A stretch of 64,000 nt of DNA. Origin: Amphiscolops sp. MND2022 (Eukaryota). Under the pieces are notes generated by a model, which worked only from the letters and a program-made list of their open reading frames with translations, was not told the origin of the DNA and made no database searches. Below, piece after piece: positions 13,600 through 40,826 of the stretch (the first letter of the stretch is position 1; each line of letters begins with the position of its first letter). The DNA lies in NCBI GenBank assembly GCA_964187785.1, contig OZ076421.1:35092001-35156000 (forward strand). Direction: 5' to 3'. Made by a program: the position numbers and the translations under genes.

Positions 13600-14568
13600 C
13601 AAGAGTTCGGGGTTTGAGTCGCGTGCGAGATCATTTTAAATGCTTGCAAAAACGGAGGGAAAACAAGATCCCCATTTGAGACTTTTGGTCTCTGTGAAAT
13701 TTTTGGTCTCTGTCCTTACTCCTTTCGTTGTTTCGAGGAAACAGCATTTTGCGAACAGAGAGACACCTTTAAGGTTTTTCGGAACTGCGCGAATTTCCAC
13801 CAGCAATTTCGGTTTTTTGATGTTCTCTGCTGAGTAAAACCGTTTTGAGACTCGAAACCTACCGTAGTTGTTTTTTTGGTACAGAGACTGATGAGTTTTC
13901 ACATTGTGTTCCTAAGCTTCAATTTTCCGGCAGAAAGATTTTTGGAAAAAATCCTTTCACTAGGGGGTCACTCCTTTGGTCTGTTTTTAGTCGGCGCATT
14001 TTCCTTTAAGGAAAAAAGCCCGACTATTACAGTGGCTAGTTTTTTTTTCGTCAGACCACAGAGCTCATCGCGTATGTACCACTTTTTACAGAAACTGATA
14101 AGTTCACTCAGGCCAAGTTCCACCAATGCAAACTTACTGCAAAGGGTCCCCCCTTTCGTTTTTTACCTTTTTTACGTAACCTACAAAACCGGAAGACTCC
14201 AAAGGGTCCCCCCTTTCAATTTTTTTCGGCACTGTGCGAATTTTTTTTTCGAAAATTTTTAATTTTTCAAAAGAGTCCCCCCTTCGGATTTTTTGATATT
14301 TTGCAACAGAAAGTATGTTAATGAATACCAAAGGGTCCTCCCTTTTCATTTTTCGGCACTATGCGACGTTTTCGAAGTTTTTTCAAAAAAATTTTTTCAT
14401 TTCCAGTCGAGAAAAGTGATTTTCCAGTCATATCGAGCATGAAAGGCACACTTTGGGTGTCTCGAAAGTGTTTTCAAAGCTTTTCATGAATACATCCTGG
14501 GCATATTTAGAAAACTGAGCTTTTTGAGCCTTAGATATAGCGCCGACTTTAGACGTTCCCGTCTTGTT
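13600..14568 (+). repeat. Long composite Repeat A copy with degenerate B-box-like 5' part
   Basis: GGTTTGAGTCGC near 13610, AAGGGTCCCCC units at 14141-14340, terminus GCGCCGACTTTAGACGTTCCCGTCTTGTT ending at 14568. Confidence 0.75.
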
Positions 14569-19084: not shown

Positions 19085-19622
19085 AACGATTCCACTGGAG
19101 TCTGTGATCCCAAGTGATTGAATGGGACATTAGAGGAGCAACATTTTCTGCGAGAAAAAATGACGATTTCAAAGAAAAGGTTGGAATTTGACAAAAAAAG
19201 AGTCTGCGGACAGTTGAAGAGAAAGTTCTACAATTGGATTTCACAACTTTACGAAAACTTTTTGAACCCATAAAGTATTACGGAAAACTTCAAACTTTCT
19301 CATTAATTAGTGCTAGATCCCTTCCCATATAAGAAACTCCCCTTTGAATTTTTTAAAAAAGATTTTTTTTATAACAAAATGCATTTCATTTCAGGATGAT
19401 GAAATCAAATAGAAATTAGAGTTTCAGACTCTGATTGACTAAATAGTGATAAAAAAAGTTCACTTTTGTTTTGTTAGCAGATTTGCCGTAGAGTAAATAG
19501 CTTGTCATCAATTCGAAATAAAAAAAATGGTTGCCTAATTTTTTTATTATTTGAATTTTGATTTTAAAATCAATAATATTTGTTATCTGAGTGTTTGTAG
19601 TGAGTGTTGCAAGCTTGATTGT

Positions 19623-36737: not shown

Positions 36738-39700
36738 TTAGGAAGATTTAATTTTCTTGGGCGGGACGGGCAATGTGCCCATGTACTTGCAGATGATTTG
36801 AAGCATCACTTCGTCAGCACCCGCTCCTGAAGACAAGCAAAAGCGAAAATGTCAAGATTTGCGAGGACCTTGTCTCTGGAAGCTTTCAAGGCTAATAGTA
36901 AAAGATATAATCAACGGAGCAGAAATTTAGAATTTTTGTCGAAACATTTGGTAACAAAATATGCCGCGCTAATCTAAGTGACTAGTTTTGTCCTCCTGAC
37001 ATCATAGCTCATCAAATGATTCACTTTTTAGAGACTTAACGACTAAGTTCTAAAGCCTGCCCAAAGAGGCCAAAGGGTCCCCTTTTGGATATGAAAAAGG
37101 TAATATCCATTTCACCCCTCCCCGATGTTCTTGATATTTTCAGTTCGGAAAAGCCAGTTTAAGCCCAAAGAATACCCTCTTAGATATTTTTCGGCTTTGT
37201 GAGATTTTTCAGAATTTTCATAAAACCGCAACTGAGCATATTCTACAAGACTGCTTTTTGGGTCTTAAGCTGCGCGACGATTTGAAACTGTCTCATCTAA
37301 TTAGTTCTAAAATACCCAATATGTACTATAAAACTTGAGAACATCCTAAACCCAATGTTTCATTAACCATCAAGAACGAATTCAACAATTTGAGCGGCAC
37401 TGGCCCTTACCTATAGAAAGAAGCCTTAGATCTCTGAACGCACGGGACACCTTGCTCTCCCTGGAATAACCCATGCCTCCCCAGAACTGTAGACACGAGT
37501 CTGACACCTCTCTGGCCAGTCGCCCCGCCTTCAGTTTGATCATGGAAGCCAACTTGGTGACGTCACAGCCTTGTTGATACAGACTTACACATCTGCAATA
37601 CAGGCATGCATAGACATGTTTCAATCAGGGATCATGGAAAAATCGATTTTATTAAAAGCTTTGGAAAATCTGAATTTAACTTCAACCATTAGTTGTTCCA
37701 CAGAAAAAAAACAATGTAATTGTAACTTCCGAGGCGAATTGAATGCTATACTTTCTTGATGACCTTACGCAAAAGCATTCATACCAAATTTCCGTGAGAC
37801 CAAACCTTAATGACCCGAAAAGTATTTTACAGAAGTTTTTAGTTTTGTTGTGTTTTAAACAGTTCAATCGTTATGTATTAACTTGATCTTTCTTGACCTC
37901 GTTCAACTTCAAACAAAGGCTCTTTTTTCATGAAAATAAAGCATGTAGCATCCCTGTATATGGATGATCGTAACAACTCCACTTCCGTCTCAAGTTCGGC
38001 CAACCGGAAGTGGATATACTGATTATGTAACAGAGGTCTTCCGAACGCTTTTCGGTCACGTGTGTACTCGGCTGTCTCTCGGATGAGTCCAAACAAGGTT
38101 TCAACGATACTGGCAGCACCCCACATTCGTTCTTCCTGGAACTGGATCATTTGATAGACAAACCCAAGTCCTTCTTCGCCTAAAAACCCAGCGTAATTGT
38201 CAGCATATTTAGCTCAATACTCTGTATACCCGGGTTGACCCTCTTACTAGCATCTTGGCAAGATTTTACCAAGTTCTTACTACATCTTGGCGACCATGGA
38301 AGAACCCATGGCAAGATTCTTAAGATCTTACTAAGATGATACATTATTCCAAGATCGTATCTTGTCACGATGGACAAAATTCTAAGGTTATGAAAAACAC
38401 TCTACCTTCGGTACAAGCAACCGATACTCAATCTAAAGGCTCCGTACACCCAGCAACGGCCATTTCTACTTGTTTTCATAATCAAAATGCTCCAAACTGC
38501 TGAAACAAACTTGTATGCAAAAATGTGCGAAAATTTACGAAAACGTATTCTGGCTTCCAAAATTCTGACGAGAATCCTAATAACTCCTCACCTGTTTAGG
38601 ACTGAGAAATGCGAATGTACCAAATGAACCCTCATTTCAAGGACTTTTGAAAACTTGTAATTTCTCACTCCTGTCGATTCCAGAGACGGAGAAAAATTGT
38701 CTCAAACGTAAAAAGCCACTATCGGAAAGTTACACAGGGAACACTAAAAAATCCGGAAATTTTTCGTAAATTCATATCTCCGTCTTTGAGCCTGTTTCAG
38801 CTCATTGTCCAGGCAATTATTCAGCTGGAGGCTTTTCTGGCGCCGTTGTTGGCAACGATTTTGCAATTGATAGAACAATTAAATCAGTGCATCCCTAAAT
38901 AAACAGCATAAGAACTCTTCAATCAAATTTTATACCTTACAAACAGAAAATTTTAATGCCTAATATAAACATGCTAAAATGTTGATTTTTGCTGACTTCC
39001 TTTCAGATTTTTTTTCTGGCCAAATAGGATTTTGCAATAAAATTATTCTTTGGAACATGGCTCTCTTGATAAGATCTTACCATGACATCTTGGCAAGATC
39101 TTAGCTAAGATTTTTCCAAGATCTTACTAAGATATCCATGGAGGGAAAAAATATTTTTTTTGCTCAATTTCATCTGAATTTGATGTCAAAAAAAGGTGCG
39201 TAACTTTTAAACAATTACCACAATTTCAAGCAAACTACCTGATAACCTTATTTCTTGAAAATAGATTCTGGTCAATAATTTCGCAACCACGCTCACCTAT
39301 CAGATTTTCTTCAGGCACTTTGACATTGTCGAAGAAAATCTGGGCCGTATCTGAACTGTCCATTCCCAGTTTTTCAATCTTTTTCACCCTCTGGACGCCC
39401 TCCGAATCGAGGGGTACACAAATGAGAGACTTGTTCAGATGAACTGGCTCGTCTGGTTTGCCAGTATTGACCAGCATACACATCCAGTCAGCCTGGATTC
39501 CATTGGTTATCCACATTTTATTACCAGTTATGTAGTAATAACCGTCCTTCTTAACCGCCCGGCTGGTAATCCCCGCAACATCGCTACCCCCTCCTTGTTC
39601 ACTGACACCGATACAAGCAACCAAATCACCGGCAATGGAGGGCGCCAGAAACTTTTCCTTCAAATAGTCGGATCCAAAGTTAGCCAGAGCTGGAGTTGCC

Positions 39701-40826
39701 ATGTCACTCTGGACCCCGATGGCCATAGGGATAGCCCCACACGAACACTTGCCAAGCTCCTCTGCAGCAGCAATTTCGTAGCTGTAGTCTAGTCCTAAGC
39801 CTCCGAACTCTGTGGGTTTCGAGATGCCGAGGAATCCAGCGTTTCCCAGTTCTTTGAATAACTCCCGGGCTGGAAAAATTCCGGCCTTTTAGCAGCCAAA
39901 GCGTAAATTCATGGGGAGGAAAGTGACATTCAGACTCAAAAGAATTCAACGTTCGGACATTTTCGGGGAACATGAAGTTTGGTTTTTGAGTGATTCTTCA
40001 CATTAAAACGTGAGTTTTTGAGTGATAATCAGTTCCAAGGAAGTTTACACTGCTTTCATGTCAATTTTTGAAATATGAGCATAGAAACGGGTGTATAAAA
40101 AGGTGGTGAGATACTAAATAGTTCATTATTTTATCAAACATTTCAAGTTTTCAAGTATTTCTAGAAGGTTTGCAATGTTTGAAACACCCATGTGTTTCAA
40201 GTACTCATACATCGGCTTCTTAAATCTGCGAGCTCGTTTTCAAACGATTGTCTGGCGGCGCATTTGACTAGTTTATTTCTCCACACTTCAACGATTACAC
40301 TGAAAAGTCCATTTTTGACAGTTTGAAAAAAAAAACACATAGAAGATCATAATTGGTGTTCGTTCAAGATTATATTCGCAACCGAATTTGAGTGGGAAAA
40401 ACTTGAAAAACGATGTTTTTTTATTTGTTCAAACACATCCTGAAAAAAAACCTTTTTGCAACCTTGAGTTCTAACGGAAATTATACGCAATGTAAACAAA
40501 CTGTCAACTAAATGTAAATCCAAATTATGAAGCCATGAGTTTTGAGAATGAGTTTACGCCTCATTCTTCATTACCTGTTCCCATTCATTCACATATGGCT
40601 CGATATGTTTCTGGATGAGTTTATTGTACGTGTCGCGTAACTCAACGTGTTGCTGGGTGTAAATGTGTTCATGCTCCAAAGTAGGTTGGGGTAAGGCCTG
40701 AAGTTTGGTGGCAACTGGTTTGGGCTTCTCGGACACAACCTGACAGCGGTTTGCAGAAGCCGCAAACGTTCTGCATGCAACATTCTGAAGCCCAAAAGTG
40801 GAATTTGTCAGCATGCGGAGTTTCAT
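36738..40826 (-). CDS. Mitochondrial acyl-CoA dehydrogenase (ACAD family, LCAD-type catalytic Glu in FQEERM), 5 coding exons, about 445 aa
   Basis: Exons 40826-40575, 39885-39297, 38179-37954, 37592-37411 and 36826-36738 join in frame. Motifs: N-terminal targeting peptide, IGVSEQGGGSDV, GNKMWITNG, EKLGMDSSDTAQIFFDNVKVP, KAFGRPL, LQFWGGMGY, RDLRLLSIGAGADEVM. The intron 3 donor is non-canonical. Confidence 0.92.

What the first reader, a model, noticed from the sequence alone, without database searches (positions are those of the whole stretch)
37593..37958. Non-canonical GG-AG intron of the acyl-CoA dehydrogenase coincides with a TA-flanked TIR element (introner-like candidate)
Seen: protein conservation (SSIYR|CVSLYQQG, family pattern YRxxxLY) places the junction at TACAG|GGATGC...TATTGCAG|A on the minus strand. 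The donor is therefore GG, and no GT or GC donor nearby restores the frame without an implausible insertion. The same interval is bounded by imperfect inverted repeats, CAGGCATGC-ATAG-ACATG (37601+) and the reverse complement CAGGGATGC-T-ACATG (37956 down), each flanked by TA. The last 3 nt of exon 3 (CAG) are the first 3 nt of the TIR, and the intron ends 8 nt past the other TIR. Established: CAGGGATG is an Ac/hAT-like TIR start, TA is the Tc1/mariner TSD, and MITE-derived introns (introners, larvacean non-canonical introns) are known. Inference: this may be a transposon-born intron spliced at a non-GT donor, possibly helped by end-to-end pairing, inside an otherwise intact metabolic gene.
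Basis: partly seen in the sequence, partly recalled or inferred. Interest (0 to 1): 0.8.

Follow-up and report, generated by a model that had tools for sequence, protein, structure and literature searches.

The report
Hairpin-closed intron with GT/GG donor alleles
One intron of an animal fat-metabolism gene starts with GG on the assembled chromosome copy and with the normal GT on the same animal's other copy, and its two ends form a long hairpin; it is a good natural test of how strict splice-site recognition is in this lineage.

Summary
Intron 3 (37953-37593, minus strand) of a five-exon acdh-6-like acyl-CoA dehydrogenase gene lies exactly where homology puts it, and it begins with GG. No GT/GC-AG alternative keeps the protein length. 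GG is not an error: read-derived contigs and a second assembly both show it.

The other haplotype of the same sample reads CAG|GT at the same junction. The two alleles differ by an 85-nt tract that is about 20% divergent, against 0.4-1% in the flanks. The tract covers the exon end, where all four differences are synonymous, and the 5' arm of the repeat.

The inverted repeat is about 70 nt per arm, far longer than reported. It is present in both alleles and highly significant.

The intron is single copy and has no detectable repeat family, so "introner" and "hAT" are not supported. An origin by a one-off inverted-repeat insertion at TA remains plausible.

The intron is lineage-specific. The ancestral intron lies 8 nt downstream (millipede and two other animals). 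Three closer relatives have introns at -15, +22 or none at this site.

A related species has a GA/GG-AG intron in the same gene, and CAG|GGA fits the non-canonical donors known from the copepod Eurytemora. The GG allele is therefore probably spliced, but no RNA data exist.

This scan has noted similar GG/GA/GC-donor, paired-end introns elsewhere in this genome.

The parts
36738..40826 (-). Five-exon acdh-6-like acyl-CoA dehydrogenase gene. Exons are 40826-40575, 39885-39297, 38179-37954, 37592-37411 and 36826-36738 (including the stop).
   Evidence: Pfam N, M and C domains. tblastn with homologues. Named cluster members are 'probable acyl-CoA dehydrogenase 6'. Splice sites were read. Introns 1, 2 and 4 are GT-AG.
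37593..37953 (-). Intron 3, 361 nt, GG-AG on the assembled haplotype. It is 379 nt and GT-AG on the other haplotype.
37952..37953 (-). The GG donor dinucleotide. The context CAG|GGA has an exonic AG and A at +3.
   Evidence: Confirmed in read-derived contigs and in the independent assembly L010.
37887..37971 (-). Hyperdivergent allelic tract. There are 17 substitutions and 7 gap columns in 85/92 nt. The four exon differences are all synonymous third positions.
   Evidence: The tract edges match the ends of the half-depth, haplotype-specific 145-nt contig.
37888..37959 (-). 5' arm of the terminal inverted repeat (last 6 exon nt plus the first ~66 intron nt).
37598..37675 (-). 3' arm of the terminal inverted repeat. 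It is identical in both alleles and ends 5 nt before the acceptor (8 nt if counted from the CCTG core).
37593..37600 (-). TATTGCAG: the TA flank plus the acceptor. It resembles the exon end ATATACAG.
   Evidence: direct reading.

Best explanation
What it is. This is a real, lineage-specific spliceosomal intron of a single-copy metabolic gene. Its RNA is closed by a helix of about 65 imperfect base pairs between its two ends. Its donor is polymorphic: GT on one haplotype and GG on the assembled one, at the same junction.

How it most likely works (inferred). Both alleles are removed by the major spliceosome at that junction. This lineage accepts G-only donors when the exon ends in AG and +3 is A. 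The terminal helix holds the two splice sites together.

Origin (inferred, about even odds). After the ancestral intron 8 nt downstream was lost, a one-off DNA of about 350 bp with long inverted ends landed at the TA of ATA-TA-CAG. Its CAG|G end gave the donor. The duplicated TA plus the host CAG gave the acceptor.

It is not a member of any detectable repeat family.
For: Shown:
- The junction is exact.
- GG is real.
- The GT allele is in the same ENA sample, at 117x against 103x for the GG contig.
- That allele carries the variants and tract edges of the second haplotype seen in the reads.
- The long inverted repeat and closing helix exist in both alleles.
- The intron is single copy (control).
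- The ancestral +8 phase-1 intron is present in L011, L013 and both millipede gene copies.
- The site is empty in L007.

Supporting that GG is spliceable:
- Related species L004/L005 have a lineage-specific intron in the same gene that can only be read as GA-AG or GG-AG.
- In Eurytemora affinis 10-12% of donors are GA/GG, with an obligate exonic AG and A at +3, in recently gained introns (PMC5714493). CAG|GGA fits this.
- All 7 exon differences between the haplotypes are synonymous.
- Unchecked earlier notes of this scan report the same donor types in this genome.
Against: - No RNA run holds this gene, so splicing of the GG allele is unobserved.
- In most animals GT>GG abolishes splicing (own knowledge).
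- In my own sample of this genome, 13 dynein introns plus the 3 other introns of this gene are all GT-AG.
- A helix that buries the donor could hinder U1 binding instead of helping.
- For the insertion origin, three extra nucleotides (TTG) sit between the right TA and CAG, a 2-nt duplication is weak evidence, and no family exists.
- The first 15 intron nt of the GT allele repeat the last 15 exon nt (12/15). Each of three relatives also has an intron within 37 nt of this site. Both points favour local relocation.
Confidence: 0.55

Rival explanations
1. The GG allele is a splice-defective or weak allele carried heterozygously. Only the GT haplotype makes normal mRNA.
For: - The other haplotype has a canonical donor at the same place.
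- My 16 other checked introns in this genome are all GT.
- There is no RNA evidence.
- The only canonical alternatives on the GG allele disrupt a conserved helix.
- GT>GG is usually null in animals (own knowledge).
Against: - A fixed GA/GG-AG intron sits in the same gene of a relative.
- The donor fits the Eurytemora non-canonical consensus AG|G[A/G]A.
- The coding sequence of the GG haplotype is intact, with only synonymous differences.
- Earlier notes report many such donors in conserved genes here (unchecked).
Confidence: 0.3
2. The intron is the old neighbouring intron moved by local duplication and deletion (intron sliding), not an insertion. Step 1: a 15-nt tandem duplication created the CAG|GT donor. 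Step 2: a 34-nt deletion moved the acceptor from an L004-like state at -15.
For: - The GT allele reads ...TACA|GGTCATCTATCTACA directly after GGTCGTCAATATACA, a 12/15 match. P0273 reads RSSIYRSSIY.
- A 9-mer, CTGTATTGC, is shared with the L004 intron. It is placed so that a 34-nt deletion gives our acceptor.
- Relatives have introns at -15, +8 and +22, all within 37 nt.
Against: - This reading does not explain a 70-nt terminal inverted repeat.
- Similarity beyond the first 14 nt is not significant.
- The introns of relatives do not align with ours.
- The relatives also lack a second ancestral intron, which fits one cDNA-mediated loss followed by independent gains.
Confidence: 0.3
3. GG is a base-call or assembly error.
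For: None found.
Against: The 145-nt contig is identical in four runs, at the half depth expected for one haplotype. An independent assembly is 100% identical.
Confidence: 0.01

Closest known systems
GA/GG donor introns of the copepod Eurytemora affinis (Robertson 2017, PMC5714493; also Frey and Pucker 2020, PMC7072748)
   Same: GG donor, exon ending in AG, A at +3. The intron is needed for the full-length protein and sits at a lineage-specific position in a gene with much intron turnover.
   Different: No terminal helix was reported for Eurytemora. Here the donor is polymorphic GT/GG within one animal. My small sample of this genome found no further such donor. The organism is not identified.
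Introners and other MITE-derived introns (review PMC11282704; PMC9860276; PMC12130899)
   Same: Terminal inverted repeats. A short flanking duplication (TA). One splice site would come from the element end and the other from the duplication plus host sequence. The site is absent in relatives.
   Different: Introners are defined by many similar copies. This intron is single copy, with no detectable relatives of its arms.
Non-canonical introns of the tunicate Fritillaria borealis (Henriet 2019, as summarised in PMC11282704)
   Same: Inverted-repeat ends, exonic TAC before the intron, non-GT donor, species-specific position.
   Different: Fritillaria borders are mostly AG-AC or AG-AT and affect most introns. 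Here 3 of 4 introns are GT-AG. The mitochondrial code is not the tunicate one.
Euglenid nonconventional introns (PMC11282704)
   Same: A stable helix brings the intron ends together, and the borders are non-canonical.
   Different: Those are in a protist lineage, are excised differently and lack a polypyrimidine tract. Here the acceptor is normal.
Intron sliding by tandem duplication (own knowledge, not checked here)
   Same: The position lies 8-22 nt from the ancestral and relatives' positions. A duplicated exon piece sits at the donor.
   Different: Sliding does not predict a long inverted repeat.

Membership tests
Introner / MITE-derived intron family | Many similar copies in the genome | tested here: not met
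   Only self-hits were found with the intron of either allele. Arm words are at control level. The arm profile finds only the two arms. A control repeat gave 13 hits down to 76% identity.
Introner / MITE-derived intron family | Terminal inverted repeats | tested here: met
   About 70 nt per arm at about 75% identity, with 0 of 2000 shuffles reaching the score.
Introner / MITE-derived intron family | Target-site duplication at the borders | tested here: inconclusive
   TA is present on both sides, but 2 nt is weak evidence, and 3 extra nt lie before the host CAG.
Introner / MITE-derived intron family | Absent from the orthologous site in relatives | tested here: met
   The L007 exon is uninterrupted here. 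L004/L005, L011, L013 and the millipede have introns at other offsets.
hAT (Ac-like) element | 8-bp target-site duplication | tested here: not met
   The 8 nt on the left (TCCATATA) and on the right (TATTGCAG) do not match.
Tc1/mariner-type MITE | TA duplication, and repeats related to other copies or to a transposase-bearing partner | tested here: inconclusive
   The TA flanks are met. No related copy or partner was found.
Eurytemora-type G[A/G] donor intron | Exon ends in AG and intron +3 is A | tested here: met
   CAG|GGA; consensus from PMC5714493.
Eurytemora-type G[A/G] donor intron | Spliced in RNA at that site | not testable with these tools
   No RNA run holds the gene. The single read-laying run showed DNA contigs only.
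Eurytemora-type G[A/G] donor intron | Such donors recur in the lineage | tested here: inconclusive
   There is one GA/GG-AG intron in relatives L004/L005. None of 16 other introns checked in this genome has such a donor. Earlier notes claim many (unchecked).
U12-type (minor) intron | Donor consensus RTATCCTT | tested here: not met
   The donor region reads GGATGCTA on the window allele and GTCATCTA on the other.

The most novel reading that the evidence does not exclude
In this lineage the long helix between the intron ends takes over part of the job of U1 pairing. The donor then needs only AG|G, and donor and helix evolve together. The two deeply diverged 5' arms pair with one unchanged 3' arm: GT with a weaker donor-proximal helix (-16.8 kcal/mol) and GG with a tighter one (-20.1 kcal/mol). 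They would be alternative co-adapted solutions kept in the population.
Probability: 0.15. Interest if true: 0.8.

Novelty: new member of a known kind. Interest (0 to 1): 0.55.

Why it matters
G-only splice donors are almost unknown outside one copepod and one tunicate, and how they are recognised is unsolved. Here one animal carries a GT and a GG version of the same intron. Four silent marker bases lie within 18 nt of the junction, and one more lies 7 nt after it. A single RNA read can therefore report both the allele and the splice outcome.

This makes the tolerance of the spliceosome, and any help from the end-to-end helix, directly measurable without transgenics.

The locus also records fast intron turnover. 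Five species or groups show four intron positions within 37 nt, next to a lost ancestral intron.

Tried and rejected
- RNA evidence: no RNA run holds the gene. The only read-laying run gave DNA contigs.
- Base-call error: rejected.
- Paralogue or other source for either allelic tract: none in the genome.
- Repeat family: none.
- hAT 8-bp duplication: absent.
- U12 type: no consensus.
- Known RNA family in or around the intron: none at E<=1.
- Homology of the intron with relatives' introns: no blastn hit.
- Extension of the exon-copy similarity beyond the first 14 intron nt: not significant, p 0.1-0.56.
- Terminal repeat in the relatives' introns and in the L004 GA-AG intron: not significant.
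- Templated correction of the 5' arm from the 3' arm: undecided. Where the alleles differ, the GT allele matches the other arm at 9 columns, the GG allele at 4, and neither at 6.
The 13 dynein introns I could read are all GT-AG.
- Organism: not identified. The protein atlas gave only bacterial clusters. COX1 shows TGA=Trp and AGR at conserved Ser positions, so it uses the invertebrate code, not the tunicate one.
- The first bacterial-like hits (citronellyl-CoA dehydrogenase) suggested gene transfer. I dropped this because frog, bird, amphipod and millipede have the same family.

Full report
**The gene.** The window's minus strand carries a five-exon acyl-CoA dehydrogenase gene.
- The exons are 40826-40575, 39885-39297, 38179-37954, 37592-37411 and 36826-36738.
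- Pfam finds the N, middle and C-terminal ACAD domains.
- The nearest named relatives are 'probable acyl-CoA dehydrogenase 6' of a frog, a bird and an amphipod.
- Bacterial citronellyl-CoA dehydrogenases are also close. The family is widespread in animals, so I do not read this as gene transfer.
- The gene is single copy in the 1.07-Gb genome.
- Introns 1, 2 and 4 are GT-AG.

**The junction and the GG.**
- The Pfam C-terminal domain profile runs from exon 3 into exon 4 without a missing or extra position. The junction is therefore TACAG|...|ATGTG.
- The intron is 37953-37593 and starts with GG.
- Because CAG ends both the exon and the intron, the cut can be drawn in four ways: GG-AG, GG-CA, AG-GC and CA-TG. 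None is canonical.
- Every in-frame, stop-free GT/GC-AG alternative removes 4-11 or adds 8-16 residues inside a conserved helix.
- GG is not an error. All four DNA runs that hold the locus contain a 145-nt contig (37857-38001) identical to the window.
- An independently assembled ENA contig (L010) is identical over 12,249 nt.

**A second allele with GT.**
- In one search the 145-nt contig has half the depth of the long homozygous contig next to it (27 vs 53, 46 vs 87, 34 vs 63, 10 vs 20).
- I searched the protein collection with the read-through ORF of exon 3. This found two ORFs from one ENA sample. P0281 is the window's allele (L010, 103x). P0273 lies on contig L006 (117x).
- L006 carries every variant that one search showed for the second haplotype.
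- Its divergent stretch begins and ends exactly at 37971 and 37887, the edges implied by the contig graph.
- In L006 the junction reads TACAG|GTCATC...TTGCAG|ATGTG. This is a canonical GT-AG intron at the same place.

**The hyperdivergent tract.**
- Between the alleles, 85/92 nt show 17 substitutions and 7 gap columns.
- The flanks show 1 substitution in 280 nt upstream and 5 in 475 nt downstream.
- The four differences in the last 18 exon nt all fall on third codon positions and are synonymous. The chance of that by random placement is 15/3060.
- All seven exon differences between the haplotypes are synonymous, and the last exon is identical.
- Neither tract has another copy in the genome.
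- The tract therefore looks like two old allelic lineages that both stayed under coding constraint, not one recent mutation burst. This is an inference.

**The inverted repeat.**
- The reported 11/12 repeat is the outer tip of an imperfect repeat of about 70 nt per arm.
- It is present in both alleles. Scores are 43 and 51 against a shuffle mean of about 20 and maximum of 36-39, with 0 of 2000 shuffles reaching it.
- Folding closes the whole intron with about 50 long-range pairs.
- End-to-end duplex energies are -40 kcal/mol for the GG allele and -36 kcal/mol for the GT allele.
- Next to the donor, the GG allele pairs more tightly (-20.1 against -16.8 kcal/mol).
- The other three introns of this gene and the corresponding introns of five relatives show no such pairing (z -1.2 to +1.1).
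- The 3' arm is identical in both alleles, and both diverged 5' arms pair with it.
- If the arms were once perfectly complementary, the original donor would have read GC. GT (a T insertion) and GG (C to G) would then be two departures from it. This is an inference.

**No repeat family.**
- The intron of either allele, the exon-intron block, 15- and 18-nt arm words and a profile of the three arm sequences find only this locus.
- The same tool found 13 copies, down to 76% identity, of a repeat in the last intron.
- The profile search scored only 150 candidates, so very old copies could be missed.

**Relatives.** Intron positions are counted from ours, which is 0.
- +8, phase 1: L011, L013 and both tandem gene copies of the millipede Chamberlinius. 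This is the ancestral position.
- -15: L004 and L005.
- No intron at -15, 0 or +8, and one at +22: L007, the closest relative found.
- Ours, L007 and L004/L005 also lack a second ancestral intron after 'WGxA'. This fits one cDNA-mediated loss of two neighbouring introns followed by new gains. It equally allows repeated local relocation.

**Points favouring relocation.**
- The GT allele's intron starts with a 12/15 tandem copy of the last 15 exon nt.
- A 9-mer is shared with the L004 intron, placed so that a 34-nt deletion would create our acceptor.
- Similarity beyond that is not significant, and the introns do not align.
- I therefore leave the origin open: an inverted-repeat insertion at TA or sliding, at roughly even odds.

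**Is GG spliced?** No RNA data exist. Three points make splicing likely.
- L004 and L005 have a lineage-specific intron in the same gene that can only be read as GA-AG or, shifted by a 5-nt direct repeat, GG-AG.
- In Eurytemora affinis 10-12% of donors are GA or GG. They always follow an exonic AG, nearly always have A at +3, and sit in newly gained introns. CAG|GGA fits this.
- Earlier unchecked notes of this scan list many GG/GA/GC donors with paired intron ends in this genome. One follow-up read them as transposon-derived.

Against this, the 16 other introns I read in this genome are all GT-AG. I put spliceability at about 0.65.

**Verdict.**
- The transposon-family and hAT readings fail their defining tests.
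- A one-off inverted-repeat insertion stays possible.
- The new and useful fact is the GT/GG allele pair inside one animal, marked by nearby silent sites.

Noticed in passing
L004:10981-11657 and L005:10970-11646: A related species has a lineage-specific intron inside the equivalent of exon 3. It can only be read as GA-AG (AAAG|GAAAGG...TCTAG|GAAG) or, shifted by a 5-nt direct repeat, as GG-AG. No GT/GC parse exists.
   Followed up: partly
window 37090-37187: A 98-bp stretch in the last intron is missing on the other haplotype (joint 37089>37188 in all four runs). Part of it belongs to a multi-copy repeat (13 or more genome hits). It has no clear inverted ends.
   Followed up: partly
window 38156-39195: Intron 2 is filled with an extremely high-copy repeat. 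Summed contig depth is about 1e5, and loose ends show GGCAAGATCTTGCCAAG-like units.
   Followed up: no
L006:1-5460: The other haplotype has different sequence upstream of exon 3. It includes ORFs with an integrase (rve) domain and a faint Pox_A32 ATPase hit, possibly a Polinton-like insertion in intron 2.
   Followed up: no
L004:14386-15817 versus L005: L004 carries a hAT transposase (zf-BED, RNase-like and dimerisation domains) between exon 4 and the last exon, and L005 lacks it. L005 has exon 4 twice (13642-13821 and 19227-19406).
   Followed up: no
window 39297/38179 and relatives: Ours and L007 have an intron at LIG|EEG that L004 lacks. The ancestral intron after 'WGxA' (frog, bird, L011, L013) is missing in ours, L007 and L004. 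Intron turnover in this gene is high.
   Followed up: partly
L021:1501-2835 (G000:C1929, mitochondrial COX1): COX1 has 11 TGA and no TGG codons, and AGA/AGG fall at conserved serine positions. This points to the invertebrate mitochondrial code, not the tunicate one.
   Followed up: partly
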